From the NCBI GenBank assembly GCA_013115145.1, contig JAAPAO010000092.1:17114-81113 (forward strand): DNA of 64,000 bases, read 5' to 3'. The position numbers and the translations under genes were made by a program. Below, piece after piece: positions 9,561 through 60,030 of this stretch. Position 1 is the stretch's first letter. Every line of letters starts with the position of its first letter. Source of the stretch: Perkinsus chesapeaki ATCC PRA-425. Taxonomy: Eukaryota > Protista > Perkinsozoa. A model generated the notes under the pieces. The model saw only the letters and a list, made by a program, of their open reading frames with translations. It was not told the DNA's origin and searched no databases.

Positions 9561-11263
9561 TCATCTCAATATCTCTTGACTGTTGAGAGGCTCTATGACA
9601 GCTCCACGAGCAGTCCTCTACAACCACGAAGCCGACTAGTCTCAACACGGAAAGGTCCTCTACCTTCTTAACGCTCCTCCTCAACCCACCACCGATATCC
9701 TCTACAGAGTCCTCCTGTCGAAGGCCCAAGGGTGTCGGTGCTACTCGACTGGGCTTCCTCTGAGCCATCTCTATTACTGTTGTGTCGCCCAATGCTAAGA
9801 GAACAATGAAGCTTCGCGAGCAATTCGGCAACTCACATTGGCCTCGAGTGAACATCTTAGTGATCTTCTTCAGCAACTTTGACCCTGACCTTCGGAACCG
9901 AGTCTCCTCCTCATCCGGACCGTCCTCAGCATAAAGAGTGTCTCCTTCACGCAACTGGTCTTCAACACGAAGCTGATCGGCTATCACTTGATGAGAGAGC
10001 TCATAGGAGTATATAACCAAATGCATCTGATAATAGGCGTGGGTTCAAATCCCAGCGGCGGCAGTTCTACTCCTTGCAATATGGCCTCGATCAAGCACAC
10101 TACAACAAGGAGAACCAAACCTGATACCGGCAGCAGCCCTCTCGTGTCTGGACTGCCTGATCAAACGACACTATTTAGGAAAGTGACCAGAGCCTACTAG
10201 CCACGGCCACAAGGATAACCAGAATCCAGCGAGTTTGCCCACACACCCGCAAGGCTCGACCGATCCTTTCCACCTATCGGGTAGATCGAAGAGGGACGGC
10301 AGAAGGGAACTAACCTTCCCGAGGAGCTCACGCAATGTGTCAACGTCACCTCCCTCGAGACCTTCAAAACGTTCAAAGTCTCCTCCTTCCAACTGATCAC
10401 GAACTGGTAATGGAGTTGAGTATCTGACACTAGTAGGATGCGCCGACTGGTCTTAACACAAAAATGGGACAGCCCAGCACACAATACTCAGCCAATTTCC
10501 CAAGGACAATCCCCATAGGTAACGCTTGCAATGCGAGACTGATGCCTTGTGCGGTAGCATACTGGACCTGCAATGGGCCGACTCGTTTTAAGTGGAGAAC
10601 CCCAGTGGACGTTACCGCCATAGTGGGCTGAGGCGGCTCTTTGAAGAGAGCAAGGTAAACCCGGCTGTAGTACTCCGATCTGCTCGCTATCTGGAATCCT
10701 CGACCATCTACAGTTCTTGTCCATTTACCGATGCAGATCTGATACATATCTTAGGTTAAAGCATGTCAGATACGAAATATGTAATCGGACAACCCTCAGC
10801 ACCGATCCAAAGCATAGCCATCCTTGTATCCTATACTTTATCCTCCACCAATATCCTTGTAGCAGCGCGCCAAAGTCTCTCACACCTGCCAGCGTGCTGC
10901 CCATATCGACGAGCTGTCTTCACCTCGCTGTTTGCTTTCCTCGTATTGGCGGAAATAAAGTGAACCCGCTTCGCTTCGCTCGTCATCAACTTCCTTCTGT
11001 TCCAAAGTGCCCAGGCCATCCATCTTCATTATTTTCTCCAGCTGCTCATCGAGTCCTGATGGTGCTGTATCTTTGCGCACTATAAAGATTCGTCTAGCCC
11101 TCGACCCACCGGCTGTAAAGTGCTGACCGGATAGATTGGCAAGCACGGCGGTGAGCAAAACAGCGACAAGAGAGGACCAAACCAAGCTGCGGCCGAACAA
11201 CCAAGCAAAAAATGGAGCATGTGATGCGATCGGAGGGCCCTTCTGTCGCTCGAGCTGAATCAA
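9561..11263 (-). CDS. Hypothetical multi-exon protein with one N-terminal hydrophobic segment
   Basis: Open exons FAWLFGRSLVWSSLVAVLLTAVLA..., RVYLALFKEPPQP..., LEGGDFERFEGLEGG..., MHLVIYSYELSHQVIADQLRVEDQLREG... joined by GT-AG introns. The start is uncertain. Confidence 0.5.
10027..10070 (-). other. 44-nt GT-AG intron made of an antisense tRNA 3' fragment
   Basis: Minus strand GTAGAAC-TGCCGCCGCTGGGATTTGAACCCACGCC-TATTATCAG. The plus strand reads AGGC GTGGG TTCAAAT CCCAG CGGCGGC A. Removal joins EAILQG to MHLVIY in frame. Confidence 0.7.
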
Positions 11264-11639
11264 ATCTTTCTGACACCTCTAGCTCTCTCGTGAAAACGTT
11301 ACTTCCAGGCATCCAGAGCTCTGATGATACAGTTGCTCATTGGAGTCGAACAGGAACTTAAGCGCTGCCACCGACGCTAAGCACAGGACCTGGCATGCTG
11401 CAGTGAGAGCCTGACACAAGCACATGCCGTACGTCTTCTAGCTCATACGCTCACCCCCTTAGCCATGGACAGACTGCCCCATGTGAACCATTTGCGGTGT
11501 ACTAACGATGCATATCGAGCACACTCAACTAGCGCCAAGACATCGAGGGCGGTGATCGCCTGAGTCGGCATCAATGAGGCTGCTATCATGCCGCGCTACC
11601 CAAAGCATTAGACCAGTAGTAGTGAAAGCTAGAGATGAT

Positions 11640-12470
11640 ATTATGAGTGCAGTGCCAGCACAGTTATAGGAGCTAGCTCGGAATAGAGACAGCAGCCACC
11701 CGCCGAGAGACTGTGGGGTGGTAGAGTAAAGAAAAGCAGGTATCTGATTAAGGGTTCATAAACATTCATCATCGCAGCCCCAAAGATGCGAAAATAATGA
11801 CAGATGATGTACACCGCAGAGCGTTGAACATCGCCTATGATTGGTCGAGGGAAAGGCATGTGCAGATAGTTACACTGTACTGGTAAGGCTGTTGCTGCTG
11901 CTTGCAACATACCCACAGAGCAGCGATTGTTAGACGGTCGAGGTACTCAATCTGATAGTTGAGTAGATGCTCTAAGTTTGACATCTCGCATAGACCACAA
12001 CTGTCATCGGGTCTCAACGAGATCCACTAAAAAGAGCGGTTGAGACCCTTGCTGATTGATACCCTCGTAACGACAAAGCTAGCTAGAACAAGTGATAGTA
12101 GCTTTCAATCACTTCAAGTGCTTCCGACAGAATGCAACCACCTCACCGACCAGAGGAATTGGCTCTCGGCATCCGTCTCGGCCGAACACACAGAGATTAA
12201 AGATGGCAAATACGTATCTAATGCACGCCAGGTCGAATAAAATCGACAATACGTTGATAGCAGCAAACGACATAAACATAACCGTGGAGTTGAACCTGAC
12301 AACACACACCTGTGTAGGTCTCAAATAACTTAGCTGACTCACCAGAAGTCTCGGGACTTGGGCAACGGCGAGCGATAGAGATGGTAGTCCGTAGAAGCCC
12401 AGCGCTCCGTTCTAACCGGATAAATGAAGCCAACGGCAAAAGTAACCGATAGTATCGCTCCAGTGACAAT
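11640..12470 (-). pseudogene. Disrupted coding-like region of unknown family
   Basis: Protein-like stretches (LLSTYCRFYSTWRALDTYLP; LEHLLNYQIEYLDRLTIAALW) are interrupted by stops that I could not resolve as introns. Confidence 0.2.
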
Positions 12471-12787: not shown

Positions 12788-15700
12788 TTATTTATCGCCA
12801 CACGAAGGAGCAAATAACTTATTCACCAAACCTGAATACTCCTCGTTTTCTTCGGAAAATGAAATCTTGAAGCAATCAAGAATGATATACGAATGTGCTA
12901 AAATCGCCGAAGTTCTAAAGCGCACATCAGTATTATATATTAGAATAACCCTCCCCAGCCCTGCTGCTGCAGCGAGCATTCGAGCTGTAAACACTGGCGA
13001 CGTAGCAAACACACCATTGGACGACACTCACCATCAACATCGTATGGCAGCACGAAAACAGAGCCAACACCGCGGCAATTGGCGACAGGAAGGCAGAGGT
13101 AATCAGTATCTAAGGCACTCTTCAAGGGGAAAGGATACACAGATCTACAAGTGTCTCCACGGGATTAGTCTCTATCTCTGGAATAGGCGTAGTTAGATAC
13201 ACTTCATCCGTTGCACATTCGGGGTCGTTACTATCGGTGATGCCGGGCAGGCAGGTTTTCCTCGTCACATCAACCTGTCCGAAGATACCACACGGTACCG
13301 ACTCAGCCAGGACCCACCGGTCTCCAGCACTCCCGAGCACTCGGGTCTTCACGGCATATATCTCCTATAGGATCGTAAACCTGACCATCGCTGCTAGCAA
13401 TCGACACTCACCACACAAGCTCACCTCGAGGGCCCAAAGAAGCTCATTGACAAGAGCGTTGGCACCGATCGTGACACACTGAACCTTGATGCCTCCCTCC
13501 GGTATCCGGTCGGGATTGAACTGCACCCCTATCCACGCCTCAGCGGTGCCTGTCTCGAACACTTAGGCTCCTTCTATCCGACCGCTTCTTACCACAATAG
13601 TCGCACGGCGCCCACCAGGCTGTCCCTGTGCTGTCGGCATCAAAGGCATTCTGCGGAGGATTGGCGGCGGTATACCTGAGGACTTCTCCAGTGAATTGCC
13701 GCGTCCCCGGCTCCGGACCCGCTCGCAATCGCCGTGACGCCGAAAGCTGAACTAGTGGGTATGCGACTTGCCTCACTACACTCTTCCGAGCTGTAAAGAC
13801 GTATGTCGTAGACCTTCCAAAATCTAATGAGAAGCAGCCTCTCCGCCACATAACCTAGAGATGCTCACAATCGCTTCCCCAGAGGGGCAACATTTACAAT
13901 CCGCCAGCGAGTGTTCGGTGATGGCTCCGATGCGCTCTCTGTGAGGCCGGACCACACTCCACCCGATAGGAAATGGAATACTTGCACCTAAAAGGTGAAC
14001 GAAGTTGCTTCTTCCCGGCCTGTGGATTTGCCAATGTACATCAGAAATCTTTACCTCACTCTTGAGACATCCTGGCGGTCAGGATAGTTTAATTAAAGTG
14101 TTAGTAACTACATCTCTCTAAGCTCTAACCAATGAACATCTTCAAGCATCACGTCTGATGCACAGTCTCTGTCATCTCCCGAAGAATTTCAACGCAAAGA
14201 GCTCCTGTGAAGGCGTAAGCAGTTTAATCAAACGAATTATTAGATACTCCTCAATATCCCTCCGAATGCCGAATTTGGAGTCGCAAAGTTGCGCCCCGAA
14301 GTTGGCTGCTGCTGAGTTGCTCCATCTGCTGCCACCAGTGTTGCCCACCTGTAGCCATGCTTTCTCGTTCGGCTCTGATGTCTCCAAAGCAACCGTCCTC
14401 GCAACATGTCTGATATCGGCCGGCTGCAGAATACGAATGCACTTCACTTCTCGAGAGGAATCTATCAAGAGGCTCTCTCATCGCAGGAACAGTCTGATGA
14501 GGGAGGATTCGTCATAGGGGAAGAAAAATTCTGTCATGTTATGCTTTGAGAAGTTAAGCTGCTCCGCAATCCTACCACTGAGGAGCACATGTACGATGCG
14601 GTGCATACATTCCAGAATAAGATCATTGAGAAAGCGATAATAGATCCTCCAAGCGCCGCCGCCCTACTGCCGCCGCTCAAAGCCGTGAACAATATACCAA
14701 TCCATGGACTATGGTCATCACCATCAGGTTGCCAATATGTCTCGGTGTTCATGTCGAATGCTCGATACCTTAAAGAGGACGCACCATGTCACTAAATCTA
14801 CATCGCACGACTTGTTCTTGGCAAAATGTTATCGACTTTACGATTCCAGTTATCAACTGCAAGGCCAGAAGTGATGATGAAGCGTACTAGCGTAGTAACA
14901 CTTCCATCTCAACTTCTGAGGGCGCCGAAATACTCGTAATTGTATACAATATTATTTTAGTGGAAATTGATAAGTACAACTCAAATCACCTCACCAACCG
15001 CTTGAGTCATCGAGCTCACTCACCTAGCACGCTGAACAGGGTACATAAATTTCAAAAATGGATATCTTGACCAAGAGTATCAAATATTAATTTCAAGTGA
15101 CTTAACCATGTTGCATTAACATTGTGCTTTCTCGAGGTGGAATTCGTGTAGACTTATACGGCAGCGCCTTCTCATCTTTCACCAACTCCAGAGGGACGGA
15201 TAAAACAGCGGGCGTTGTTCCATTCTGCATTCAAGCGCTCAGTTCCTCATATCATCCAAAGGTGTCTACAATATGCCCCTTCAGCTCAGTAGGAATGTTC
15301 TTAAAAAGACTCATCACTCAACGGGTTCGAGTGAGTGACCGCGCACGAGTAATTGCATTTAGAGCACGCCCTGGCACGCATGCTCACTGCTGAAGTGGCT
15401 GGGATGGAACAATGCGCTGCAGGCAACCAGTCAAATAACAGTTAATATAAATCGATAACACTATAAAAGTTTGCTATAAATAAACTGTATGTTATGGACT
15501 CACGCACGCTGACAAAGAAAGAGAACTCCACGAAATTTCGGTCGAATAAAGAATACATTGTCTACAATAAGACTCGTCGACGAACTTGCAGCTGAGCTGA
15601 GACAACTTCTACAGATAGCTTCCCCACCCGAGGAAGGCCAACTCACATCCCAACACTCATTAGTTTGCATTGCAATTCTCCTATTATAGGAGAATTGCAA

Positions 15701-18700
15701 TGCAAACTAATGAGTGTCCTATTATAGGAGTCCTATATCCATTGGTTCGCACGAGCTTACCCTCCGTATCGTCCGCCACTTCTACTCGAACTCACAATAA
15801 CCGCTGGCGCTTGGGGATCTCCTCGGCCAATGAAGGAACCTTCACACTTGGAATCTCTATAAAAGGATATCTCATTAACCTATGGGAAGCAAGGGATGAT
15901 TCAGTCTAGGCAGGACAGATCGCGGACCTGCCAGAGCGCAGCTGAGGGATGGTTTGTTATATCCAACCGCCGAATTCTCCATTTACTCTGCCAACCCCAT
16001 CCTAGCATGACTCGGCCTGGCAAACGATCACAACATGAGAACGCGAAAAAGGAGCGATCGTTCCTCTATCGTAAAAGGAGCGGCCTCACGGAAGTGAGGC
16101 CGCTCCAAGCTTTTGCAAGTAACAGTGTCCATGAAAGAGACGTACTAGACACATAAATATATTTTTATACATGTATTCGATGCATACTTGAAATATGTGA
16201 CCAAATGGGAGCTTAGATGCATTCCTTCTGGGCCTTGGTGGGAGAAACGCAAAAATTTTGGATTCCCTTCGCCGCTGAACTCCGAATTCTGCTGTCCGAT
16301 AATTCCCGTCCAGCTTTTTGAGACCAGAGCTCCCACAAGAGCTCCGCCGACTATTTCAGATAAATCTTATAAGCACACGTAAATGAGGCAAACTCACTAT
16401 TATCCTGCCAGACACACTCTCCTGACGGCGCACACCAACGATGATCGTACCTACGCAAGGGAAAAGTCCTACCACTAAATACGCCTATTGAAACATTCTT
16501 ATAAGATAATGAAAGGGAAACTAGTCAACACATGGAAGTGAATTCTATGACCGAATTTCTATCTATGCAGTTATAAGTGAACTTAACCCGGAGATCGATT
16601 CTTAATCTGCGATAATTTGAGCTCACTCAGAGCGCGCTGAAATCCTCTACGCAAATTGCCAAATTTCAGTTATCTTTAGAGTGCGGGATACAATGAGTTA
16701 GCAGCGCGAACGGTCCTAGGCGCGGTAAGGCCCAAACGCGGAGCGAAGAGAAAATGAGAGGCACTCGTCACCGTGGATGCGGACCTTGCGACTCAAATTG
16801 AGCTCTCAAGCTTAGTATATACCTAGGAGTCGTGGGCTGGGACTTCGGAGCTTCGAATCTGATGCCGTAGGAATCGATAAATGGCCGACGAAAAGCAATA
16901 AAATCGAAGTCCTAGGGAGGGCTGTACTTTAATTTCTTCCCTCCAGTAGCATGGGAATTTTATAAACATTTTCTGATGAGTGCAACACACTCGTACTTGA
17001 GCCTCATTATTGTCTGCCATTGAACAACAGATCTCCACGCTACAAGGCGCTCCAGAGATAGCTCGTTCATAAGGTCCTCCACCTGTGACATGTCTGGGAC
17101 AATTACACCCGCCTTCGTGGACTCGTAGACGCGAACCTAGAAATAAGCGGCTTTAAAAAGCCCTATTAAAAGGCTTACGCATTGCACCGTGCTGTCGGTG
17201 ACCAAACCAATCCATGGAGTTTGACTTTTATCCTACAAGATAGGTGTTGATGGAAGGCGACAAGAGAGCGAGCCTACGTCAGATGGTCTCGAAGTCGGGC
17301 CTGTGCCACGAATACTATCTTCATACCTGTTGGAGGAATAATCCGAAGCTCTTGCTACCAGAGGAGGCTCCGAGGATCATCGTTTAAACCGAGGCGATAC
17401 AGTTCTCGTATTTCTCATCGAAGTTTCTATTATATCTCCTCGCGCCCTACCCCTCGTAGCACACCCCATAAATTTTTCTCTCAGACAGGGGACACTTACG
17501 ATCCAGCGTAATCGTCATAGTAAGGGAGACTTGCCAGCCATCCTGTCTCATCGTTATTATCATATACGTTATAAGGATCCTCTCGCCTCCCTGAGCCACA
17601 AAAGGGTTGTGCTTCAAAAGTGAGATCTGCCTTGAGGACGCGGCGTTCTAGTGCGAGCTAGGTGGAACCTTGTTAAAGTGATTCCCCGAGAAGTTAAGCA
17701 CATCGGTGCTGGCCTCACCAACCAAATTCTGCCAGCGTTGGAGTTCCCACACGCGCGATCTGAGACAAGTATCCGCAAACAAGGCGTTTAATGCCTACAA
17801 GACAATAGAATATCAGCCCCGATGCTGTTCAACTGGGCTAGTTCTGTTTTTTGTTTTAAATAATATCCTTCATTTGTACAATCTTTTCAACCAATCCTTC
17901 TCCTACCTAGAACACCCAGTGACGATACCGGTTCACCGTCTTGTATAGGATCTCCTCGACACTCTGGATGGATGAACCTAAGCCGACCTAAAGTCACATC
18001 CCGGAGACGGGTGAGGCTCCGAGTGAGCGGTTCATATTGAGGAAGGATATTATGCCCCTACGCTGCTACATCTCAACGGTCCATACTGTACAAAGACCCA
18101 GCATGTCAAAGCCGCACGCGTTCAAACCCCAGCCTCGGCTCTTTACACGCCATATAGTGTTATTATATCTAGGATAAACACGCATCACCTACACAGAGGT
18201 ATCAGCAAGTAGTTCTTAATATACTGTACACCTTACACCGGGGTAGGGTAGCTGCCCGCCGTAGGTGAGGCTCAGCCAGGAGCCACCACTGAGAAGATCA
18301 AAAGAGTATCTATACCATACCAACTTAAATAGTGAGCACGCTCGGCAGTGAATGCCCGCAAGTACTACGCGGTCTCCCAGCGAACAGATCCTATATATTG
18401 TACGAGCGCTCGGGAGACAGCAAGTTGAGGCCCGAAGAAGGCCCGGACACATGCGACTGTTGGCGGTGTCTCCGAGATCCAACGGAGACCTATGTACCTG
18501 ATCTCGGGTAACGACGCCTTGGTGGGGGATGGCTACGCTTCCTCCTCGTAGCATTCAGAGCATCTACTCCTCCAAGATTTCGAAGGATCGTTAGTAATGC
18601 CATCGAAGGCGTAAGTCGGTTGTCTCGACCCATCGTGGGTTGATGCAATGATGGCAATGTCCCGAACCTGCCAGCTTAATGCTAACACGCCCCAAACGGC

Positions 18701-26212: not shown

Positions 26213-29200
26213 ATGTCATCTCATCGTTTAATCTCCTCGATAGCAGGTCGCCGAGCATTCGCCTCAGCTACCAGGGAAGAGCTTCCTCGCGGAGTTTTCC
26301 GTTCGTTCGAGAGGAACTCCTCACCACCAGATGGAGGAGCCTCGTCCGCACAAGATGGTCAGTTGCCAGCGGGGATAACGAGGGTGACAGGACGCGGTAC
26401 GGGAGCAGGCCAGCTGTGGCCGGGAGAGGGGAACAGATCGAACGTTAGAGAAGATATAGGCGATGTGCCGAAGGAGCTTCCGAAGGGAATGGCCAGAGTT
26501 GGTAGGGATACTCCAAATGTTAAGCTGCGGCGTCCCCCACCCCCGCCACCTGAAGAGCCGGCAGGGATGAGGCTTCCTAAGGGGCTTGTAAGGGTTGGTA
26601 ATGCCGAGAAGAGAGCGGAGAGAGGCCTGCCTAAGGGGGTCACCCCGATTAGCGGAGCAAAAGATGGTATGGAACTCGACGTGGATGAGGGGGAGCTACC
26701 ACGTGGGTTGAAGAGAATGACAGACGTGAACGCCGCCCCGGTGAGGAAGGAGAGTTTGGAAAATATTTCAATTGAGAGGCGGAGCGAAGCTTATAGAGGA
26801 TCTATGAATCAACAGTCTGATGCTCGGTTGGCAAGTGGTACCATTCCGGTGGTTCAGCGACCGACGATGTACGGCGGTGTTATGATCACTCCGGTGGAGA
26901 CTAGTGAGTTGCATTGATAAGCTTATTTTCGACACTCCTTTGACAGGCGAACCATCACCAGCCAGCTTGCCTGTACCGAAGTCATCTAGAGAGATTGCAG
27001 CTGAAGTGACACCAGCTGCGGTCGACATATTGAGGGCGTATTTGTCAGGGAAAAAAGAGGTAGAATGGGGAATGCAGGATGCCGGGATCGAACGGGGGTC
27101 ATTGCTTTCAGCCTGCTAGAATGGTCCTTGCACTGAGGCAACTAGCTGGCCATCATCAGAATGTTGAGAAGATTGAGGGGCTCGAGAATCTTCAGGAGTA
27201 AGTTTGCTTTCCGAGCATCTTGTTGTCAGCTTGCGGTAAGGTATCAGCGCTTGCTTGAGGATATGGGTGCATCTTTCGACTTGGCAAGATTCTCAGGAGC
27301 GGAGGTATCTGAGGTTGCGGAGTATTTGCGAGTAAGATACGAAATAGGTCAGATTGTTGCCATGTCGGTTGCAGATACTAGGCGCTCCGGGTGTTACTGA
27401 TCCCTCTAAGCAGCTGGCCAAACGACTAAGCGTAATATAATCGCCCGTATCTCCAATCTATCATTCGCTCAATTCTCAGTTTCAAATTTGTGAGCGTCTC
27501 CATGAGCTCAGCCCAGTTGAGAGGATACGGACCATATATGTCATCACTACAGTAGGATTGGACAGGTCTCTTAAGGCGGGCGCTGGAATGATCTTCAATG
27601 GGCCATTTAAACGTATTATTCATAACGAAATTGTATAGCAGAAGGTACGAGATGACAGTGGGTATAGTTTAGCAATTTTCCAATGTACCCAATACTAGTA
27701 GTTGCAAGCTGTTAGTAGATCAAGCCAGTATAATGCAGCAGCCTATCCGGCTACGGGGTGGCCCAGGAAATGTGTTTTTTGATCAAGTATAAATTATACC
27801 ACCAAAATACCATTTATTAGGGGCTAATAGATTCCTACCATCGCCCTTGCCATCCATTCTCCCTAGCCACCCCTGAACTTGTGAACATTGCGAGCTCCGT
27901 TTTATAGCAGCATCTTTAGATCTATTTTATGGTTTTTATTACATTTGAGTCATCACAGTTAGTTATTGATGTATTGAATATGCGGGCGGAGCGAAGCGAT
28001 TTTTGTTTTTCATTTTTAGTGGTTGGGATTGCGCCTGGATGATTACACTCATTGGGCTCTACAAGAGTCGATTGATGATTGGATTGATTCACCAGAGGTC
28101 GATGATGCCACAGTGCTGCCGGCATTGTAGGTCGAGAATTGGAGATTTTGTGAATGGGGAAATGTTGGCAGGTATCTCTTGTGCGAACCGGGTATGAGAA
28201 AGCGAAGCTATAAGGTCTTGGCGAAACCCAAAGTGAGTATCTTAAGTCGAAGCGCGGAAGGTGCGTGGGAGGTTGGATCAGGTCTTTACGAGAATGGAGG
28301 GAATGGTTAATCGTTTGGAAATTGACCAGTTAGTGGACATGGTGAGGGCCTTAGGGAAGCACCAAGCACAGGTGGGACTTGCGAGATTCTGCAAAATGCG
28401 CACGGGTTCTTTTTCAGAAGTCTATAGTGGTGAAGGCCCTGGAGCGACTTGAGGCAAATCCCGAGAAGATCTCCGATGGCAGTCTACCTTCTTTGGCGCC
28501 CTTCTTGCAGTACGAAAGGTCGTGGGTTCGAATCCCAGCGACGGCATTTTTAGGTCGACTGAAGCTGGTAGCCCAGATCTTAGTGGCGTTGCCGCACATG
28601 CGAGAAAGAGGCTTTCTAATATCATTGCGGATGAATCATCAGTACTTTTAGAACTATTTAGAGAATAGTTTGCGCATGCGTGCATACCGCTCTTCAGATT
28701 AATCGTAACGCAGTGGCGAGTCTAGTGGTTGAGCTTGCCAAAATGCCGTCGATATCGGAAGGGGTTCTCGATGAGGCTGTCGAAGTAGACTAGAGTCACT
28801 GCGCCACGAAATACTCTTTTTAGATGATTCGTCTGTCGGCAAGTCAGCTTGGCGCTGATGTACTTCCTAAGCTGTTGCTGCTCTATACCGCTGAGGGGGT
28901 GAGAATTTCGTGGCGCGCGGTCGAAGATATCCTGCATATCAGAAACCCTTGCACGAATTAGAAGTTGCTGTGATGGGTTGCCTTCGAGAGATCCAGCCGA
29001 AGGGCATCGCCAAGCTCTGCTTGGCCGCGGCTGCTGGAGGCCGTAAGATGTCTGCTTTCCGCTCTGTGAATAGCTATCCGTTTTAGTTCGAGAGAAGGAG
29101 GCTATGGTGGCCCTTTATGGCGAATGCTTAGACCGTGCTAGAAGATTTGATCCTGAAGAGTAAGGTTGTGGGTTCGATCCCTGGTCGAGGCATTTTTAGT

Positions 29201-31613: not shown

Positions 31614-33352
31614 ATGCCACAGCCGTTGTTGCAGTTCCTTGCCAAGATAGCGGCTAAAGGAGCTCTCGGTAAATACATACTTGCATCGAAGACGAAAATC
31701 CTTATTGGCTCCAAATGGACGGCTAAGGCACTGCCTCTCGCTCGAGTGTAGCTGAGCCCGCAGTGGGCTGTGTGAGCTTGTGGCTGTGTAGATACTCCAT
31801 TAAACGAAAAGCAGACGGCAAGAGTCAAGACGAGTATCATTTCTGGATATTTGACAAGTCAATAGCCGCGGTATCGATTCTCACCGCAACCCTGACGACG
31901 CTGATCGTTCTCGGAAGCCTCGAGAGGAATCCGTTCAACGAAAGGTGCACTGAAGCTCCAGCGAAAAGAAGTGTTGCAGTATTCTCTATAGATGGCGCCT
32001 TTTGCATTTATCAATTGGAGAGGAGAGGGAGCTCGGAGAGGCCGCGGCAAAAGCGATCCTGGACGATTGTTTTTCAAACGGCGTGCGTCGTCTCTGGAAG
32101 GGGAGAGCAAGTCCTACTTAGGCTCATGCTGTGCTCCCCTCCGAGCATCCACTTAGTAGGGAGATTGTAAGAATAGTCGACGCGCTGAATAATGAGTTGC
32201 CGCAACTGCTGGAAGATTACTTCAAGAGGTGAGGCTTGTCAGTCGTAGCGAGAACGCATCTCTCTGTTAGCTCTGGGGTCTCTCATCATGCCTGGGAGGA
32301 GGGGAAGAATCTGATTCCGCAATGGAAGGTGAATGCTGCCAACACCCACCGGCCTGTCTAGCTCGCCAGCTCCAGGTTCACGTACTTCTCTCGGACACTT
32401 GCAACGCCACATGTCTGCCAAGCGGCGATGTTTTCATCTATGCCGGATGCATTGCGAGGTGTGGCAACGATCTCTGCGACTAGGGTTCGAAATTCCCAGC
32501 AGATGCGCAAGTCGAGATCGTCTGGCAGCCATTATAGCCCACGAGATGGCGCATGTAATTAGTCGACACGGTAGTACCCCATATGCGGTCACCGTGCTGC
32601 CTAGTACCCTTTTCAGGTGCAGAGCAAATTAGCGCCGCTGCGATCATGGACGTGCCGCTCGGGTGAGACTCTGTCAGCGGCTATAATGATACAATGACAG
32701 ATACTTCTCGTCTATCTTAACACTATCTATGACGGCATTTGGTATCTTTCGTTACATTTTCATGTGGCATCGGCCACCTACGAGTTGGATCGTTGATTTA
32801 CCGTAATGAGCCTCATAAACACAAAAGGCCATTAGCGTTTAAGGTACTCTCGTCATTGTGAGCATGAAGCTGATGTTCTTGGCATGGAGCTAATGAGCCG
32901 AGCGGGATTCGACCCAAGAGCAGCGGTGAGTTCGATATTACCGAAACATGCCTTACGCTCCTAAACTACTCACTTTGTATTCTGTAGTGGTATGTGGTGT
33001 AAAGTATCGGCGACATCCGGCTACTAGATCTTCTTCTCCAGGACCTGCTCTTTTTTGTGATATTTCAGCAAGCCTTGTTTAGATAGGATCGCAAGCAGTT
33101 TTAGCGCTGGCCATGTCCGAGACAACTCCGTCATGGGCGCGTACACACCCCCCTTCTGAGGATCGAGCGTCAGTCCTTCGAGATAACTTGCCTCACTGCA
33201 TGCAATTTTATTATGCCAACGCCTTCAAGGAAGTCATGTTCGATGCAGCGCTCGCCGTAGATGAAAGGTCTTTTGGCAACCGTCTCAAGGCGATGGTGTT
33301 TCGACAAAGAACGACGAATGAGAGACGTTTGCAAGGTCAAGGCGTCAGCTAG
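31614..33352 (+). CDS. OMA1: OMA1-like zinc metallopeptidase (family M48), multi-exon
   Basis: LERNPFNER, NATCLPSGDVFIYAG, LAAIIAHEMAHV (HExxH), EHEADVLGMELMSRAGFDPRAA, THPPSEDR. The start is approximate. Confidence 0.88.
32459..32502 (+). other. 44-nt intron with a degenerate sense tRNA T-arm
   Basis: Boundaries are fixed by the M48 frame (GCIAR-CASRDRLAA). Contains GCGACTAGGGTTCGAAATTCCCAGCAG. Confidence 0.55.
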
Positions 33353-47362: not shown

Positions 47363-47424
47363 CTTGTGTCCTGTTCTAATCTCCCCTACAACAGCATCGT
47401 CAAACAGAAGGTCGTCCGAAGACG

Positions 47425-48660: not shown

Positions 48661-50390
48661 GTGATGTGTTATGACAGTCTTGGTGACTATTTTGGTTACC
48701 TATGGGTGGTAACTGTGATGTTAGCTTTACCATCACCTCCTACCAGAGGCACTAGTCTATTTCCTTGCATTGAAGAAGAGGAGGAGGAGGCAGATTATGG
48801 GTGTAGGACTGCTCTCGAGGGCTGGCCGAAAGTCGCTGGGTTAGGTCATGATGCGAGGGACATGGTGGCATCTTTGGTGGACTGTTTGGGGCAGCTTGAC
48901 CTCTGTCCAGAAGATTCTCCCAAGGTTGATTCAGTGCCCTTACTTTCTAAGTGAAAAGCTGTCTTTAGGTCCCTTGTGGTGGCGGTTTGTCCAGATCTGC
49001 CTCGACCTCAGCTATGTTGACTGTGGCTGGCGGGCGTGGTGATGCTTCGGTGGGCGAGCAGAGGGTGGGGGAGGTCCTACCGACAGTACAGGATGTTAAG
49101 AGCTTGCATAAATCAGTAATAAAGGGGTCGGGTGGGATCGAACCTGAGTCGTACGATGGTTGGCCTAGTACACTATCCACAGGTCCAAATAGCCTCTGTT
49201 TCGCACAGGCTTTGGCCAGTCCCAGTGGACCAGCAGCCCCCATACTCATCCGTCACCATGACGCCCTCTCCCGATAGCCTTTCCCGTCATCCCTGTGGTC
49301 CTGAGGGGGGTGCTGTGACTCTTGGATGCCCTCTATGCGACCTACAGATCACCAAGGCCGATGGTGACACCAGTGCCTCCGCTGTCTGGGGTCATGCTTA
49401 CTCCATTTGCTATTCCAAGTGGGTTATCAGGTCACCTGTATGAGCACATCTATCAGCAGCATCACAGAGACGGGATACTCCGAGTTGAGATGCCTGATAG
49501 ACCGGCCTACCTCCTCCATGCGTGCCACCGAAAGCAATGTAACTGAATCAGGACCAACCATTCGGAGGCTCTCCTGCCGTAGGTTGGTCTTTACCTAGCA
49601 GGCCAGTAAGGGCACGCCGAGACAGCCGGGCGTCTGCTTCCAAGACGCCAGAGGGCGGCGGCGGCGGCCCAACTGAGTCACCTTCCTCGACAGCGTGTAG
49701 TGTGGTGGTGAGGGAGAGCCTTTCCGGTGGGCACTACCACTGTCCCCTTTGTGGGATGCTATGTGTTGGTGATGCCCTCGGTGGTGGAGTGAGGATGCAT
49801 ATCATCGGTTGTAAGAGCTCCGGCCGCCGAAGGCTTGGCCCGAGCATGATAAGGGTCAGCAGTGGGGGGGGGCACGGGGTACCGACAGCGAGCGCGCGAC
49901 AGATACAGAAGGTGGACCGTCTATGTGAAGGAGCTGACCACAGTCAGTCGGTTGATACAGTAGTGAGATTGAATGCCGTCGCCGAGGATCGAACTCGGGA
50001 TCTAAGGTTCCACAGTAATAATAAACTGTGTTGTTCTCGTTGTTGGTGTCCTCCAGATGAGGTCCAGACTCGCGAGTTCCCTCGGGTTTTATCCTACCTC
50101 GAGCAGCTTGATTCGCCCGGTATTGCCCACCGCCCGGCCCGGAAGAAGTGGAGTTCTACCAGTGTCGAGCAGCTTGTTATTTTGGGTTAGGTATCGAAGG
50201 CTATATGACATTCCGGAGCTGGAGGAGGCTCGAGTGGAGGACTATGTTGACGCGTTGTGTCTGAACGCTTTGGAGGGTCGAGGGATGGATTTCATCGGGG
50301 CGAGGATGACATTAATAGGTAAGGAGGCGGAGGAGACAGAATTTGTGTCGGAGCCGGTGCAGGCTCTGGAGTTCCACCGGTGATCTTCCG
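48661..50390 (+). CDS. Hypothetical multi-exon protein with two CPLC..H..C (C2HC) zinc-finger-like motifs
   Basis: GCPLCDLQIT...WGHAYSIC (~49325-49410) and HCPLCGMLC...MHIIGC (~49737-49812). Splicing is not fully resolved. Confidence 0.4.
49116..49168 (+). other. Candidate intron containing an antisense tRNA 3' fragment
   Basis: GTAATAAAGGGGTCGGGTGGGATCGAACCTGAGTCGTACG...CCTAG. The minus strand shares CGACTCAGGTTCGAT with the IMPDH intron. Confidence 0.5.
49974..50015 (-). other. Complete tRNA 3' half (His-like, GTG), antisense within a probable intron
   Basis: CTGTGGA ACCTT AGATC CCGAG TTCGATC CTCGG CGACGGC A: canonical spacing and a perfect T-stem; no 5' half upstream. Confidence 0.75.
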
Positions 50391-51738: not shown

Positions 51739-55281
<3,543 letters not shown>

Positions 55282-55519: not shown

Positions 55520-57330
55520 CGATGGTGGTAGGCGGAGCGAAGCGATTTTTGTATTGGTGGTATTAGGGTGACCTAATATAATTTGGTTCATTATAGGCTT
55601 TCTATTTTTCGTTTTGAAGGTACACCGCCTCCTCCTCCTGACGCGGCGTGGGAGAGCGCGCTGGTGCCTTTATATGAGGAATATATCGACGTTTGTTGTA
55701 GTATGTACTTTGATGGATCATCTCAAGGGGTTACAGTGGACGGGCTGCGGAATTATTTCAGGTGGGCGGCGGCGGGGTAGTGTTGGCTGCAGAGGGGGGA
55801 TCGGCTGTTTTGTGATAGGAGGGTGCAGAATGGGGGGGTAGGGAAATAATGATAGCATATCAATGATAGTAATAACAACAATGATCATTGTAACTCGGTA
55901 CTAAATTGAAATATAGGATACTCTATAGTAAATGGCAGATTTCCTGTGACGCTTTGTGGATGGGACTCGGTCTCTGAGTTCACTGACTGGTGCTTCGATG
56001 ACTAGTAAGGTATGCTTGCCTTAGAAGGAACAGTTGAATTGCGTGTGAGGGTCTCAACTAGATAATCTTAGGAAATTAATAGAGAAGGAGCGAACGCGGC
56101 AGCCCAAGCCGGAGCCGTTGCAGCCACTTCCAGAGGAGTCTATGGCGGCCGAGGGTGCTAGTGGGATTAGGGATGGTGATGAGAGGAAGAGAGCCTTATT
56201 GGAGGAGATAGGCTCGTGTACTGGCGGACTGTTGACGTCGAGGCTGAGGAAGAGGCAAGCTATTGATTTGTAATAGGGGGAGGGGGTCCGAGTGGTGTGG
56301 TAGCCTTGCGGCACCGTGTTGTCTAGATCTAGATAGATCAGAACTACGGAGAAAAGGTTGAGGAAAGGTTAAAAGTTTTGGTGGCCGGATCCCCAATGTG
56401 ACAATTGTAGGCATTAATCTTAGGATTAATAATCTTGTTTATTTACTAAGATCCACGCGTTGGTGGTGATGGGCAAGAGTGTCGCTTGTCGGATGATTTG
56501 ATTTTTAGGTGGGGCCCATTGGACGCCGCCCTTTTCTTGGCCGGGCTGTCCCGATACGGTAGGAACTGGCATAGAATAGGCAAGCTCACAGGAGGACGGA
56601 AAGATGCTAAAGACGTTGCTGATATGTAATAGCATCCTACATTTAATTTACGCGCCACGAAATTATTAGGTACTATGGGGCGTTGAAGTCGGCAAAAAGG
56701 ACCAAGGCTTTGTGGAAGCGATACGCCTGCATCCGAGACACCACGGCGGGAGCTCCACCTAACCGGTCAACGTCATCGTAACATTTATCAATACTATTGT
56801 GCACGTATGGAGGATGTTGGGTTTTGGAAAGGCAATTGATGGGCTCGGCAATAGCTCTTTAATGTGATTCAAGAATCGTACTATCGCCGAGTGGTGAACT
56901 GAGACCGATACCACAGTCTTACCGAAGCTCTTGATGATCGGCACAAGTAGGAGGGATGCCTTCATTGCCTATTGTGGGCACAAGTATGAGGGATGCCTTC
57001 ATTGCCTATTGTGGGCACAAGTAGGANNNNNNNNNNNNNNNNNNNNNNNNNNNNNNNNNNNNNNNNNNNNNNNNNNNNNNNNNNNNNNNNNNNNNNNNNN
57101 NNNNNNNNNNNNNNNNNNNNNNTCACAAGTATGAGGGATGCCTTCATTGCCTATTGTGGGCACAAGTAGGAGGGATGCCTTCATTGCCTATTGTGGTGTT
57201 GTATTTACAACGACAGTCGCTCAACTCCTCTCCAGTTTTGTTTCATCCTCATGGACTATACTCCAGGCCGACATCACCACCAGCATCAGCATCAGCAGCA
57301 GCCAGATCTCTCCTCATTGGTAATGCTATA
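55520..57330 (+). CDS. Hypothetical multi-exon gene (fragments), interrupted by the minisatellite and assembly gap
   Basis: Exon-like pieces (EGTPPPPPDAAWESALVPLYEEYID; EESMAAEG...ALLEEIG; TETDTTVLPKLLMIGT) with GT-AG flanks. Confidence 0.3.
56940..57196. repeat. 37-nt tandem minisatellite in two variants, broken by a 96-N gap (57027-57122)
   Basis: ggcacaagtaKgagggatgccttcattgcctattgtg repeated head-to-tail with no spacers. Confidence 0.95.
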
Positions 57331-57797
57331 TTACCGAACTTTATTGATTGGTATCTTAGGTTGACCGAAGTCCATTGGATTCAATTGCCTATGAGCCGGG
57401 CAAGGGCTTTCGGAGCTCGGTACAGCTGTGGTGACTCGGCGCTGGTCTTTTAGTTGTTTTTAGCATTCTGGTGGAGTCAAGAGTGTATCTTTAACGCCTC
57501 ATGAGAGTTCATCACCTGACGGTTGGATAAGAAGGAGCAATAGTCCGCGGTTGGAGGGGTCACCAGAGAGCCCAATGGGAATGTCGATAGTGGTGAAGTG
57601 TCGTATGATGATGGAGGAGATGTCTATTGAATTGCAGCAAATGAAGGATGATAAGTCGGTGGTGGTGGAAGGGGGAAGGGAGAGTTGCCAGCAATAATCG
57701 GTGGTCATCGGGTCATGGAGGGACTATAGTGGATTAGGCTTTGCTTGTAGCACTCTTCGATTCTTCACCTTACAGCTCAAAACGTCAGCGATATAGA

Positions 57798-60030
57798 ATG
57801 TCTGAATACAGTAGTGAGGGTTCCTCAGTACGAAAGGTTAAGGTCATTCCCTGGCAGACGAACAGGGAGGGACCTTTCTACGGACTAAGTTTCGATTGTG
57901 AGTTATTTGTCGTAGATGTGATCTAGAGAGGAAAGTCCGAGGGATGGAGATTGAGGGCGCCAATCTTCGGGAGGATTATGAAAAGGAGCTGAAGCGTCGA
58001 AGGGATACACAGAATGAGTTGCAAGAAGTTGAGATAGCCAAAGGGGATCTCGAGGTCATAATGGGTTAGCTGATCAGCGCAGGTTCGATCCCCGGGAGCT
58101 CCTTTTCTCATTTCGGCTCAAATTGAGGAAGTAATATGTTTCCCAGTTTTTGAAATTGTCAGTATGGGAACGTGTGGCAGCAGCCGGAGCTAGGAAATCT
58201 GGTTGACTTTGGATTCGATGGGTGGGGCAAATTCAATGGAAAATGGGTATCATACTTGATTGTCGGTTAAGTCGCCGCTAAGTCCACGGCGCATTGACGG
58301 GAGATACTAGACGAGATAGAATCGAGTTGGACACATGAGGGAGGACGGCGGCATGTCAGGCGCAACAGGCGTCGCTAAAGCGCAAACTGCAGCTGGCGGA
58401 ATCTCGATCGTTGGAGAACGAGAGACAATGTGATGAGCTTCGAAATGAGATTGACCAGGTCAATGCCAGGTGAGCTGAGGCTTGCCCGCAGCAGCCGCTG
58501 CAGATGTTCTTGAAGGCTTTCGGAGGCGCAGACGGCGAGGGCGCGGGTGGAGGTCGAACTGGCTGATGCGGAGAACGAAATACAAACGTTGAAAACTGAG
58601 CTTTGTGAAACTGGCAGCAGACTGGTGGAGATGGAGGAGGTCCGATGCAAGGATATGGTGGGATGCTGTAGCGTTGAGGAAATGCAAGATTGCAAGATCA
58701 GGAGGACTTTCAAGGGCAGTTGGTGGAGGCGGAAAGGCATTGGAGGGAGGAACTGGATGCTAAGTACGAGGAGATCGCTCAACTTACTGACACCTTAAGC
58801 GAGACGACAGATGCTCTGGAAGCTCAACGAGCGGAAAATGGTAGTGGTGAGAAGTGGGGTGCACGCATGCGCGATGTACGCGCCGCGTGCTTGGGCTAGG
58901 CACTTGTCGGAGCGAAATTTGTCTTGGATGATAATTGACTGTGAGCTGCATGTTGTTGAAGAATTCATTAGTAATGTTAACTTTACTGAGGTCATCTTCC
59001 TGAGCTGTTTTGTATCATTTGAGGTGGTTATTGAGTATCTTGGTCATTTGAGGGATCCCCGATAGTTGAGAGGTGGTAGGCAATTTTGTTTTTAGAGGTG
59101 ATGACGGAGAGGCATGCTAGAGCGGAGGATGATCATGTACGGTACACGAAGGAGCTGCAGCATCACATACATATGGTGGAAGGCGAGGTGTTAAGGGTCA
59201 TGTGGTCTGGTGAATGGGGAGGGAGGAGGAGGAAATACGTTAATACTGTAGTTATACGGAGGAAAATAATATAATAGAAAGGAGTTTGATAGGAAATATG
59301 ATACTAGTGATACGGAGGAGATATGGAAAAGACATGATGACAATAATTAACAATTCAAGTTTGATCGCCCAGTGTGAGACCATGTCTGCCAAACCACTCG
59401 GCTCCGTTAGATGAAAAATGTGCACGAAGTTCCCCTCTGTTTATTACTTCGATGACCCTCTATGCCTGCCTGTTAGTTGAAGTCGTCATCTCGGTCGGCA
59501 AGACTGGTTGCCGAGAATGAGAGGGACAACGCTGCCTTTGCTCGGAGTCAGGTGGGAAGTGCGCACCCGGAAGGATACGCTTGTAAGCTTGGCAGGCCCT
59601 CGAGGCTGAGGCGAGCCTGCGAAGGGAATTCGCGGAGAAGCTTGAGCATCAGAGAGAGAAATATAAGAGAAGGGTAAAGAGGCTTTGAGAGGCAGGAGAG
59701 GTGAACTTGAGGTGAAGATACGCGATCTTGAAGAGGAGCTCCAGAAGAGGAAGGAGTATGAATCTCGGATTAAGGAGTTATTAAAAACCGAGGTGAGACA
59801 AGGGACGATATATGATATATGGTAGACATATATATATGTAGATATATATGGTAGATATCTGTAGACAAGGGTATGATATATGAATAATTTCTAATTGTCA
59901 ATAAATATAATGTATATAATGTCGGAGGGAGTGGGGGGGGGAATTTTAGGAGAAAGTTTTCGTGGATCTTGGCGTTGATCTTTACGCTTCAATTCCTTCT
60001 GAGGAGTAGCAGATTCTCTACCACAGGCCT
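57798..60030 (+). CDS. Coiled-coil protein, multi-exon, unknown family
   Basis: E/K/R/L-rich heptad exons (NLREDYEKELKRRRDTQNELQEVE; VELADAENEIQTLKTEL; LEVKIRDLEEELQKRKEYESRIKELL). The ends are approximate. Confidence 0.7.

What the first reader, a model, noticed from the sequence alone, without database searches (positions are those of the whole stretch)
10027..58115. Recurrent spliceosomal introns built from tRNA 3' fragments: candidate new intron-gain route
Seen: ten tRNA-like 3' fragments (T-arm, 7-nt acceptor strand, discriminator, no CCA, no 5' half), at 10035, 18112, 27073, 28517, 29163, 32476, 49125, 49974, 54612 and 58076. They fall in or at inferred short GT-AG introns of eight unrelated genes, in both orientations. 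At least six match GGTTCRANNCC by eye, against about 1 expected in 128 kb of both strands at uniform composition. In four cases (10027, 28510, 29160, 54609) the fragment is essentially the whole 40-47 nt intron. In two sense copies the Pol III-terminator-like T5 directly provides the pyrimidine tract before AG. The acceptor ends differ (CGACGGCA, CGGCGGCA, TCGAGGCA, GGCGGGCA, ATCCTGCA), implying several donor tRNAs rather than one SINE. Inference: tRNA halves, pre-tRNAs or tRNA-gene DNA are captured into exons (e.g. templated or RT-mediated break repair) and tolerated because they arrive as spliceable introns. Most junctions have AG on both sides, compatible with target duplication but also with the generic proto-splice site.
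Basis: partly seen in the sequence, partly recalled or inferred. Interest (0 to 1): 0.92.

Follow-up and report, generated by a model that had tools for sequence, protein, structure and literature searches.

The report
Conserved tRNA-gene tails inside introns
In this Perkinsus parasite, nine or ten introns in 64 kb are built around the tail end of an old transfer-RNA gene, and the 11-letter spot that normally docks the factor TFIIIC is unchanged across three species, so these are ancient, selected elements rather than freshly captured fragments.

Summary
All ten fragments are at the stated places. GGTTCRANNCC occurs 8 times against 0.7 expected. A profile built from the copies picks out nine window copies cleanly; 32476 is weak. 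One fragment intron (54609-54655) is spliced out in an RNA contig. Six more are supported by orthology or reading frame. Two (49125, 49974) are unresolved.

The "ongoing intron gain by tRNA-half capture" reading is not supported. All five fragments I could compare sit in the same introns of one or two other Perkinsus-type species. Synonymous sites between these species are saturated (37-45% identity at fourfold sites). The B box is 93% identical between orthologues, while the rest of the fragment is about 50%. The T stem is not maintained. Both orientations keep the same DNA profile, which spans tRNA positions 43-77. That span matches the 35 bp held by the human TFIIIC tauB module.

Best reading: these are ancient relics of tRNA-gene 3' ends, kept in mini-introns as B-box (probably TFIIIC-binding, ETC-like) DNA elements. 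Whether they created the introns remains open.

The scan found the same thing earlier in other windows of this genome. I found no paper describing it.

The assembly gap lies in a 37-nt tandem repeat and does not affect the finding.

The parts
10027..10070 (-). 44-nt GT..AG intron of the giant receptor-like gene. It holds an antisense tRNA-3'-end module (plus-strand 10035-10063, B box 10042-10052).
   Evidence: Removing it joins a transmembrane-like exon to the 196-aa last exon in phase 0. Exact B box. Profile score 16.5 bits. No RNA or orthologue available (one search found no homologues).
18086..18146 (-). Inferred 61-nt intron with an antisense module (plus-strand 18112-18140). The B box has one mismatch (CGTTCAAACCC).
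   Evidence: GT..AG and frame only. Profile score 13.5 bits, the weakest accepted copy.
27060..27111 (+). 52-nt intron of the RAP-type gene with an antisense module (27072-27102 on the minus strand). The B box has one mismatch here.
   Evidence: The orthologous intron in L001 carries a perfect GGATCGAACC. 28 of 34 module positions are identical, and L001 has an in-frame stop, so this is an intron.
28510..28553 (+). 44-nt intron that is almost entirely a sense module (28517-28546) ending GCATTTTTAG.
   Evidence: The orthologous intron at L001 5874-5920 keeps AGGTC, the B box, GCA and the T run. Profile score 21.7 bits.
29160..29199 (+). 40-nt intron that is a sense module (29163-29192) ending GCATTTTTAG.
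   Evidence: The intron position is shared with L001, where the intron is 116 nt and the B box has decayed to AGTTCGATGTT at the same distance from the 3' splice site.
32459..32499 (+). 41-nt intron of an M48-type metallopeptidase gene with a doubtful B-box-like piece (GGTTCGAAATTCC, one extra base). Its CCCAG supplies the 3' splice site.
   Evidence: The frame shift across the intron fits. The exon after it hits Peptidase_M48 (E=3.6e-5). Profile score only 4.6 bits.
49122..49152 (-). Module antisense to the plus-strand zinc-finger-like gene. It lies upstream of a possible start codon at 49258, so in an intron or a leader.
   Evidence: Exact B box. Profile score 17.1 bits. Context unresolved.
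49973..50003 (-). Module with the only intact 5-bp T stem, antisense to the host gene. It lies in a candidate 60-nt in-frame intron (49947-50006) or in coding sequence.
   Evidence: T-arm scan found 0 mismatches. Profile score 18.3 bits. The frame is open through it.
54609..54655 (+). 47-nt intron of the IMPDH-like gene holding a sense module (54612-54641, B box 54620-54630).
   Evidence: An RNA contig of run X1 skips exactly these 47 nt. Splicing restores AQG|[10 protein letters not shown]. The orthologous introns in L003 and in P. olseni L004 keep the B box while the rest diverges.
58055..58359 (+). 305-nt intron of a coiled-coil-type gene with a sense module near its 5' end (58074-58103).
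   Evidence: The flanking exons are conserved in L003 and L004, where the intron is about 90-110 nt. The module is kept in both: intact B box in P. olseni, one mismatch in L003.
57027..57122 (.). Assembly gap inside a 37-nt tandem repeat array. It is not part of the finding.
   Evidence: TRF arrays at 56940-57026 and 57124-57196. Contigs end at 56969 and restart at 57133. The flanks are colinear in L003 and L004.

Best explanation
These are ancient relics of the 3' part of tRNA genes: about 35 bp, tRNA positions 43-77. That covers the variable loop, the B box, the 3' acceptor strand, the discriminator and the first T's of the Pol III terminator. They lie inside spliceosomal introns of Pol II genes, in either orientation, and often make up nearly the whole 40-50-nt mini-intron.

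Shown: they predate the split of at least three Perkinsus-type species. The B box has been held by purifying selection while the tRNA fold decayed. At least one of these introns is spliced normally.

Inferred: the selected property is double-stranded DNA recognition of the B box by the tauB module of TFIIIC. That would make them intragenic 'extra TFIIIC'-like sites. What such sites would do downstream (chromatin or SMC organisation, or an effect on Pol II passage and splicing) is unknown.

Inferred: the relics look like '3' halves' because only the TFIIIC-held span is kept, while mini-introns are squeezed to their minimal length. In sense copies the T run now serves as the polypyrimidine tract.
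For: Real and discrete class:
- 8 exact B boxes against 0.7 expected.
- Profile scores leave a gap between 13.5 and 6.9 bits.

In introns:
- RNA junction at 54609-54655.
- Orthology or frame support for six more.

Ancient: 5 of 5 testable copies lie in the orthologous intron of L001/L003 (Logan assembly of SRR12548988) and, for two of them, also of P. olseni L004. Fourfold sites are 37% (n=141) and 45% (n=55) identical. Ordinary introns of the same gene are 48% identical in a forced alignment, against 76% for exons.

Selected on the B box: the specified B-box positions are 93% identical between orthologues (75/81). Flanking module positions are 48-54%, and the trailer 39% falling to 20%.

DNA level rather than RNA fold:
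- T-stem pairs 49:65, 50:64 and 51:63 are formed in 21 of 54 cases, against 24 in shuffles.
- Sense and antisense copies keep the same tRNA-sense profile, including the non-palindromic T59.

Span: information content rises at position 43-44 and ends near 77. The cryo-EM structure of human tauB resolves 35 bp, from 10 bp before the B box to 14 bp after it. Its base-specific contacts are G53, T55, C56, G57, C61 and C62 in tRNA numbering (PMC11811891, read). Those six are the consensus base in 18, 18, 18, 15, 18 and 17 of the 18 copies here.

No tRNA gene is present: ARAGORN finds none in the four Perkinsus-type loci L001-L004 and Rfam finds none in the window. ARAGORN's single call in the window is not credible.
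Against: - TFIIIC binding is not shown; nothing here measures occupancy.
- C72, A73 and T75 are also strongly kept. Known TFIIIC contacts downstream of the B box are not base-specific, so a second constraint or another factor may act.
- One copy has lost its B box in one species (29160 orthologue in L001) and two carry one mismatch, so the constraint is not absolute.
- The orthologue sample is small: five loci, two to three species.
- The window copies were chosen because they match the motif. Only the other species' copies are an unbiased test; they match 59 of 63 specified positions, counted by hand from the sequences printed.
- Classical ETC sites are intergenic, not intronic.
- The B-box core is nearly palindromic, which weakens the orientation argument somewhat.
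Confidence: 0.6

Rival explanations
1. tRNA halves, pre-tRNAs or tRNA-gene DNA are repeatedly captured into exons during break repair and survive because they arrive as spliceable introns. In the strong form this is an ongoing route of intron gain. In the weak form it was an old burst that created these introns, and the B box was co-opted later.
For: - The module carries tRNA-gene features beyond the B box: AGGTC, C72-A73, T run, no CCA.
- Four introns have no room for anything else.
- Metagenomic eukaryotic IMPDH genes (L006-L009) and the intronless Chrysophaeum gene have no intron at the position of 54609. That intron is therefore not universally old.
- P. olseni has modules (L002 1763, 3173) with no counterpart found in the window's RAP gene.
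Against: - 5 of 5 testable copies are shared across species with saturated synonymous sites, so no recent gain is seen.
- The module starts at position 43-44, not at the anticodon loop.
- Acceptor differences are explained by decay.
- No target duplication beyond the generic AG|GT.
- Insertion into existing mini-introns followed by shrinkage explains the same anatomy.
Confidence: 0.2
2. The modules are live Pol III units or promoters: an A-box-like motif in the neighbouring exon, the B box and a T-run terminator. They would produce short tRNA-like RNAs from within Pol II genes.
For: A match of at least 9/11 to TRGCNNAGTGG lies 40-50 nt upstream of the B box in 4 of 12 independent loci, against 2.6% of control places (binomial P=2e-4). 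One example is TAGCCGACTGG starting at 54577. Sense copies end in T4-T5.
Against: - The test was made after seeing the data.
- Three of the four motifs lie in coding exons, where conservation is confounded. The fourth (49144-) is in unresolved sequence.
- The L001 orthologue of 27073 lacks the motif.
- By hand count from the sequences printed, only 1 of 6 antisense copies has four or more T's, so a terminator is not generally kept.
- No small-RNA data could be examined.
Confidence: 0.1
3. The motif acts in the pre-mRNA. It would be a T-arm-like hairpin or a bound RNA motif that helps define or splice very short introns, or that yields a tRNA-half-like RNA after splicing.
For: The module sits centrally in mini-introns. 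In sense copies the T run is the pyrimidine tract, and CCCAG is the 3' splice site at 32499.
Against: - T-stem pairing is no better than in shuffles.
- Half the copies are antisense and present a different RNA, yet they keep the same DNA profile.
- The acceptor strand is not conserved between orthologues, and there is no 5' half to pair with.
- Other RNA-supported mini-introns of the same gene splice without it.
Confidence: 0.07
4. Decayed copies of a tRNA-derived SINE, MITE or introner family, with no present function. The apparent conservation would come from gene conversion with tRNA genes or from low local mutation.
For: Three window copies (10035, 28517, 49974) are unusually alike: 16-17 of 22 non-B-box positions.
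Against: - No similarity between copies beyond 11-26 nt of the module, and no element body. Terminal repeats and target duplications were not specifically searched for.
- Conversion from tRNA genes would also keep the T stem, which is lost.
- Within-species copies are not significantly more alike than between-species copies (P=0.13).
- Conservation is focused on the B box rather than spread over the module.
Confidence: 0.03

Closest known systems
Extra-TFIIIC (ETC) sites of yeasts and mammals, and chromosome-organising clamps of fission yeast
   Same: An isolated B box with no functional tRNA gene, conserved between species. ETC sites are known to bind TFIIIC without Pol III and to act in genome organisation (background as summarised in PMC11811891).
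   Different: ETC sites are mostly intergenic or promoter-proximal, and budding yeast has only a handful. Here the sites lie inside mini-introns of Pol II genes at about one per 7 kb. They keep a wider tRNA-gene footprint (positions 43-77). Occupancy is untested.
tRNA-derived SINEs and MIR elements exapted as TFIIIC-bound insulators
   Same: tRNA-derived sequence with a B box, scattered through Pol II genes and often intronic. Some are retained for TFIIIC binding.
   Different: No A-box head as part of the insert, no tRNA-unrelated body or tail, no detectable family-wide similarity, and only about 35 bp long.
Introners and introner-like elements (Micromonas, fungi, Amoebophrya and others; PMC9860276, PMC7789003, seen only as search hits)
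   Same: Sequence families that occupy many introns, proposed to create introns on insertion.
   Different: Introners are recent, near-identical, often carry target duplications or terminal repeats, and vary in presence between relatives. These copies are old, dissimilar outside a 35-bp profile, and shared between species.
Split or permuted tRNA genes (Nanoarchaeum, Cyanidioschyzon; PMC3728597, PMC3978253, seen only as search hits)
   Same: A tRNA 3' half encoded apart from a 5' half.
   Different: Functional halves keep an intact T arm and acceptor strand plus processing motifs. Here the stem and the acceptor are decayed.

Membership tests
tRNA-gene-derived relic (3' end) | B box / T-loop consensus GGTTCRANNCC | tested here: met
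   6 of 10 sites match exactly and 3 have one mismatch. T54, T55, C56, A58 and C61 are invariant in 18 copies.
tRNA-gene-derived relic (3' end) | Seven-base acceptor strand, then the discriminator at a fixed distance, then a T-run terminator, with no CCA | tested here: met
   C72 in 17/18 and A73 in 13/18, exactly 11 nt after the B box, followed by T's at 74-76.
tRNA-gene-derived relic (3' end) | T-stem complementarity | tested here: not met
   21 of 54 outer stem pairs formed, against a shuffle mean of 24. Only 49974 is intact. This is expected for a decayed relic.
tRNA-gene-derived relic (3' end) | Match to a full-length host tRNA gene | not testable with these tools
   No credible tRNA gene in the window or in L001-L004. 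No Perkinsus genome collection can be searched by DNA.
ETC-like TFIIIC site | B box without an associated Pol III gene | tested here: met
   No A box or 5' half within the insert. No tRNA detected.
ETC-like TFIIIC site | Conservation of the B box between species beyond the neutral level | tested here: met
   93% against 37-45% at fourfold sites.
ETC-like TFIIIC site | TFIIIC occupancy without Pol III | not testable with these tools
   Needs ChIP or binding assays.
ETC-like TFIIIC site | Intergenic or promoter-proximal location | tested here: not met
   Seven or eight copies are intronic.
Introner / intron-generating transposon | Many near-identical copies with shared ends or target duplications | tested here: not met
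   Similarity is limited to 11-26 nt of the module. Junctions show only the generic AG|GT.
Introner / intron-generating transposon | Presence/absence differences between related species | tested here: not met
   5 of 5 testable copies are shared. This is a small sample, and P. olseni has extra copies elsewhere.
tRNA-derived SINE | tRNA-related head with A and B boxes, plus an unrelated body and tail | tested here: not met
   No information upstream of position 43. No shared body. The A-box-like motifs lie in host exons.
Split tRNA gene (functional 3' half) | Intact T arm and a conserved acceptor strand | tested here: not met

The most novel reading that the evidence does not exclude
Perkinsus carries thousands of intronic, TFIIIC-footprint-sized relics of tRNA-gene ends. 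They work as a genome-wide layer of intragenic TFIIIC (and perhaps Pol III) sites inside Pol II genes. They also record an old episode in which tRNA-gene ends seeded a sizeable share of the organism's mini-introns. This would be a source of introns, and a use of TFIIIC, not described in any eukaryote.
Probability: 0.3. Interest if true: 0.88.

Novelty: new variant of a known kind. Interest (0 to 1): 0.72.

Why it matters
Isolated B boxes that bind TFIIIC are known as rare organisers of chromosomes. Here they would be dense (about one per 7 kb in this window), intronic, and conserved beyond synonymous saturation. That makes Perkinsus a natural system for asking what TFIIIC does inside Pol II genes.

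The finding also gives the intron-origin question a datable, recognisable class of intron cores. With outgroup genomes one could test directly whether a piece of a tRNA gene can found an intron.

Practically, gene annotators and tRNA scanners should expect these pieces in Perkinsus.

Tried and rejected
- Rfam on the whole window and on two sites gave no tRNA hit. The only matches were an 18-nt tmRNA T-arm match (E=0.19) and two weak plastid UTR-family matches over the same T-arm-like bases. The pieces are too short for family models.
- ARAGORN's tRNA-Arg at 22290-22372 has no T loop and no Rfam support, so I rejected it.
- A naive 'longest open frame across GT..AG' test did not discriminate, because exons are short.
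- The homologue search with the last exon of the giant gene found nothing, so 10035 and 18112 have no orthologue test.
- Synteny with L001 ends at the RAP gene borders, so 32476 could not be compared. The P. olseni contig L002 ends just before intron 27060.
- RNA runs X1 and X2 hold no words of the RAP gene and laid no reads on the 58076 intron. Only 54609 has RNA support, and that contig differs at 13 positions in the upstream exon; the nine listed are spaced in multiples of three. It may therefore come from an allele or a close paralogue.
- I tested whether the IMPDH intron position is shared with distant eukaryotes. Apparent exon boundaries in short database proteins turned out to be continuous coding sequence (L006-L009), and the Chrysophaeum gene is intronless. 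This was uninformative about age beyond the genus.
- Species-level homogenisation of copies was not significant (P=0.13).

Full report
**What the window is.** The 64-kb window has about 48% G+C and few long open frames. It is intron-rich, with mini-introns of 40-52 nt. The nearest named proteins are Perkinsus olseni proteins, at 68% and 86% identity to exon-level queries (the second query was the SRR12548988 orthologue P0003). The organism is therefore a Perkinsus species other than P. olseni. Earlier scan notes name P. chesapeaki; I did not verify that.

**The assembly gap (57027-57122), tested.**
- Contigs of two DNA runs of the same organism end at 56969 and restart at 57133, so the gap is not bridged.
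- It sits within a 37-nt tandem repeat seen on both sides (56940-57026 and 57124-57196).
- The array lies between conserved coding blocks (56725-56787 and 57251-57271). These are colinear, in the same order and orientation, in two other species. In P. olseni the corresponding interval is only about 109 nt.
- The flanks therefore belong together. The unknown is repeat copy number in what is probably an intron.
- No fragment of the finding is within 950 nt of the gap.

- GGTTCRANNCC has 8 exact matches on both strands, against 0.70 expected; no shuffle of 100 reached 8. One-mismatch matches are at chance level overall (29 against 22.5).
- I aligned 18 copies (nine from the window, nine from fetched loci of two other species) in register with the B box, built a sequence-only model, and searched all 98.5 kb without filters. 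The 18 copies score 13.5-24.3 bits and the next best place scores 6.9 bits. The 18 match by construction. What counts is the empty range below them, and that the two extra exact B boxes (12286-, 47006) do not score. Those two are the chance matches expected.
- Site 32476 has a one-base insertion in the loop and scores 4.6 bits, so I treat it as doubtful.

**Are they in introns?**
- 54609-54655: an RNA contig of run X1 joins 54608 to 54656, skipping 47 nt with GT..AG. The same runs show nine further junctions of this IMPDH-like gene, eight of them listed with GT..AG ends. Splicing gives ...AAQ|[11 protein letters not shown], the conserved IMPDH motif. Caveat: the contig differs from the window at 13 positions in the upstream exon (the nine listed are spaced in multiples of three) and at none downstream. 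It may come from another allele or a close paralogue.
- 27060-27111, 28510-28553 and 29160-29199 (RAP-type gene): the flanking exons are conserved in locus L001, and the boundaries are GT..AG in both species.
- 58055-58359: the flanking exons are conserved in L003 and L004. This intron is 305 nt in the window, not a mini-intron.
- 10027-10070 (minus strand): removal joins a hydrophobic exon to the 196-aa last exon in phase 0.
- 32459-32499: removal joins two exons of an M48-type peptidase around its HEXXH motif.
- 18086-18146: inferred from GT..AG and frame only.
- 49125: lies upstream of a possible start codon.
- 49974: lies in a stretch open in frame, so a 60-nt in-frame intron (49947-50006) and coding sequence are both possible.
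- Relative to the host genes, orientation is about five sense and five antisense.
- From the RNA-supported and orthology-supported models, roughly 1 in 10 introns of the IMPDH-like gene and about 3 of about 22 in the RAP-type gene carry a module.

**Age.** I obtained three orthologous loci.
- L001 covers the RAP-type gene and L003 covers the IMPDH-like gene and its neighbour. Both come from a Logan assembly of run SRR12548988.
- L004 is a P. olseni contig.
- Exon nucleotide identity to the window is 65-80% in BLAST.
- Fourfold-degenerate sites are 37% (n=141, L003) and 45% (n=55, L004) identical, which is essentially saturated.
- Ordinary introns of the IMPDH-like gene are 48% identical in a forced alignment, against 76% for exons.

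Against this background, every one of the five fragments that could be compared sits in the orthologous intron:
- 27073: the antisense module is 28/34 identical, and L001 has a perfect B box where the window has one mismatch.
- 28517: the whole module is kept.
- 29163: the intron is 116 nt in L001, with a decayed AGTTCGATGTT at the same distance from the 3' splice site.
- 54612: CTCAGGTTCGATYCCCA is kept in three species while the rest of the intron is unalignable.
- 58076: the B box is intact in P. olseni and has one mismatch in L003.

Within window 54.5-63.5 kb, the B-box modules of the window and of P. olseni correspond one to one.

**What is conserved.** In ungapped register with the B box, identity between orthologues is as follows:

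| Region (tRNA numbering) | Identity |
|---|---|
| Nine specified B-box positions | 93% (75/81) |
| Two free B-box positions | 67% |
| 44-51 | 54% |
| 63-65 | 52% |
| Acceptor strand 66-72 | 48% |
| Trailer | 39%, falling to 20% |

Counting only the other species' copies, which were not chosen for matching, 59 of 63 specified positions fit the consensus (hand count from the sequences printed).

The outer T-stem pairs (49:65, 50:64, 51:63) are formed in 21 of 54 cases, against a shuffle mean of 24. No hairpin is being maintained, so 'T-arm' overstates what is left.

Across all 18 copies, information content is confined to positions 43-77. The consensus is A44 G45 G46. C48. C50. GGTTCGATCCC, then C63, then C69 G70 G71 C72 A73 T T T. 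C72 is present in 17 of 18 and A73 in 13 of 18. Nothing is seen upstream: no anticodon arm and no D arm. The sense and antisense subsets give the same tRNA-sense profile.

Orthologues are only slightly more alike than unrelated copies (11.9 against about 10 of 22 non-B-box positions). There is no significant within-species homogenisation (P=0.13). The differing acceptor strands therefore say nothing about the number of donor tRNAs. Copies share no sequence beyond the module.

**Mechanism.** The C72-A73-T-run at a fixed distance and the AGGTC variable loop make an origin from tRNA genes (DNA, or primary transcripts with trailer) very likely. The start at position 43-44 argues against tRNA halves.

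What has been selected since is an 11-bp DNA motif with moderate constraint over about 35 bp, in both orientations and without RNA pairing. The cryo-EM study of human TFIIIC resolves 35 bp of tDNA on the tauB module, from 10 bp before the B box to 14 bp after it. Its base-specific contacts correspond to G53, T55, C56, G57, C61 and C62 (PMC11811891, read). The span equals positions 42-76, almost exactly the module seen here. Those six bases are the consensus in 18, 18, 18, 15, 18 and 17 of the 18 copies.

I therefore read the modules as intragenic TFIIIC-binding, ETC-like sites. Binding itself is inferred. So is any downstream role, such as SMC loading, boundary function, or an effect on Pol II passage through the mini-intron.

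The module (35 nt) plus the splice signals equals the minimal intron length of this genome (40-47 nt). This explains why the fragment looks like the whole intron. It also means that shrinkage of a larger intron around a selected core gives the same anatomy as intron creation by insertion.

**A tentative extra.** A match of at least 9/11 to the A-box consensus TRGCNNAGTGG lies 40-50 nt upstream of the B box, the canonical spacing, at 4 of 12 independent loci. Control places show this 2.6% of the time (P=2e-4). Three of the four motifs lie in host exons; the fourth (49144-) is in unresolved sequence. At 54577 the motif TAGCCGACTGG encodes part of the IMPDH flap, whose length matches my recollection of human IMPDH2, so it was probably not inserted with the fragment. 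The test was post hoc, and exon conservation confounds it. By hand count, only one of six antisense copies keeps a run of four T's. I give the 'live Pol III unit' rival 0.1.

**Comparison with what is known, and novelty.** The closest known things are ETC sites and B-box-bearing SINE/MIR relics exapted for TFIIIC.
- Membership as a tRNA-gene relic is met on B box, acceptor length, discriminator and T run. It fails on stem pairing, as expected for a relic.
- Membership as an ETC site is met on sequence and conservation, unmet on location, and untestable on occupancy.
- Introner, SINE and split-tRNA memberships fail on defining features.
- Six literature searches found nothing describing tRNA-end introns or intronic B boxes in Perkinsus or elsewhere. 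The Perkinsus intron survey I read says nothing on this.
- The scan itself noted and followed up the same phenomenon in several other windows of this genome. My results agree with those follow-ups. They add an RNA-verified junction, a three-species comparison for this window, the lack of stem maintenance, the 43-77 span and its match to the tauB footprint, and the A-box observation.

**Verdict.** The finding is a new variant of a known kind. Interest is 0.72.

Noticed in passing
window 15652-15718: A 67-nt near-perfect palindrome (hairpin). It gives equal sub-threshold Rfam microRNA-precursor hits on both strands (mir-19 36.7 and 36.5 bits, mir-33 28.7). It is probably just an inverted repeat.
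   Followed up: no
window 5503-5532 and 58669-58698; L003 4228-4254; L004 2647-2676: A roughly 27-nt motif (CGTTGAGGAAATGCAAGATTGCAAGAT, ending in a tandem 8-mer TGCAAGAT) occurs twice in the window. At the second place it is 93-100% conserved in two other species despite saturated neutral sites. DNA contig depth there is about 12 times the baseline and many contigs break at it, so it is a dispersed conserved element.
   Followed up: partly
window 53173-53213 (RNA-supported 41-nt intron); L003 orthologue: An ATGGCGCGCGGT block is identical in the orthologous intron of another species while the rest of the intron has diverged. It is another conserved intronic motif, unrelated to the B box.
   Followed up: no
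window 56940-57196: A 37-nt tandem repeat array surrounds the assembly gap. It is absent from the corresponding, much shorter interval in P. olseni.
   Followed up: yes
window 59269-59320: A short purine-rich stretch (GGAGGAG-type ends) has summed contig depth near 125,000, against about 85 nearby, with dozens of alternative joints. It is an extremely abundant simple or satellite-like repeat.
   Followed up: no
window 53618-53740: The IMPDH-like protein reads [10 protein letters not shown] where IMPDH normally carries the catalytic cysteine loop. The gene is transcribed and spliced (RNA contigs), and the substitution is shared by L003 in the alignment.
   Followed up: partly
window 22290-22372 (minus strand): ARAGORN calls a tRNA-Arg(TCG) of 83 nt here. 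It has no T-loop consensus and no Rfam hit at E<=10, so it is probably a false positive.
   Followed up: yes
window 54475-54606, compared with an RNA contig of run X1: The spliced RNA contig differs from the window at 13 positions in the exon upstream of the junction (the nine listed are spaced in multiples of three) and at none downstream. This suggests a second allele or a close paralogue that uses the same junction.
   Followed up: no
module position 71, all copies: The window's copies mostly end GGCA (G71 in 7 of 9). The two other species mostly end GTCA (T71 in 5 of 9, against 0 of 9 in the window), even at orthologous introns. This may be lineage-specific drift of the preferred flank. 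The sample is small.
   Followed up: partly
L002 1763 and 3173; L001 10387: Further module-bearing introns occur in other genes and species: the 5' part of the P. olseni RAP gene and its upstream neighbour, and a mitochondrial-carrier gene in the SRR12548988 species. The class is therefore general in the genus.
   Followed up: partly
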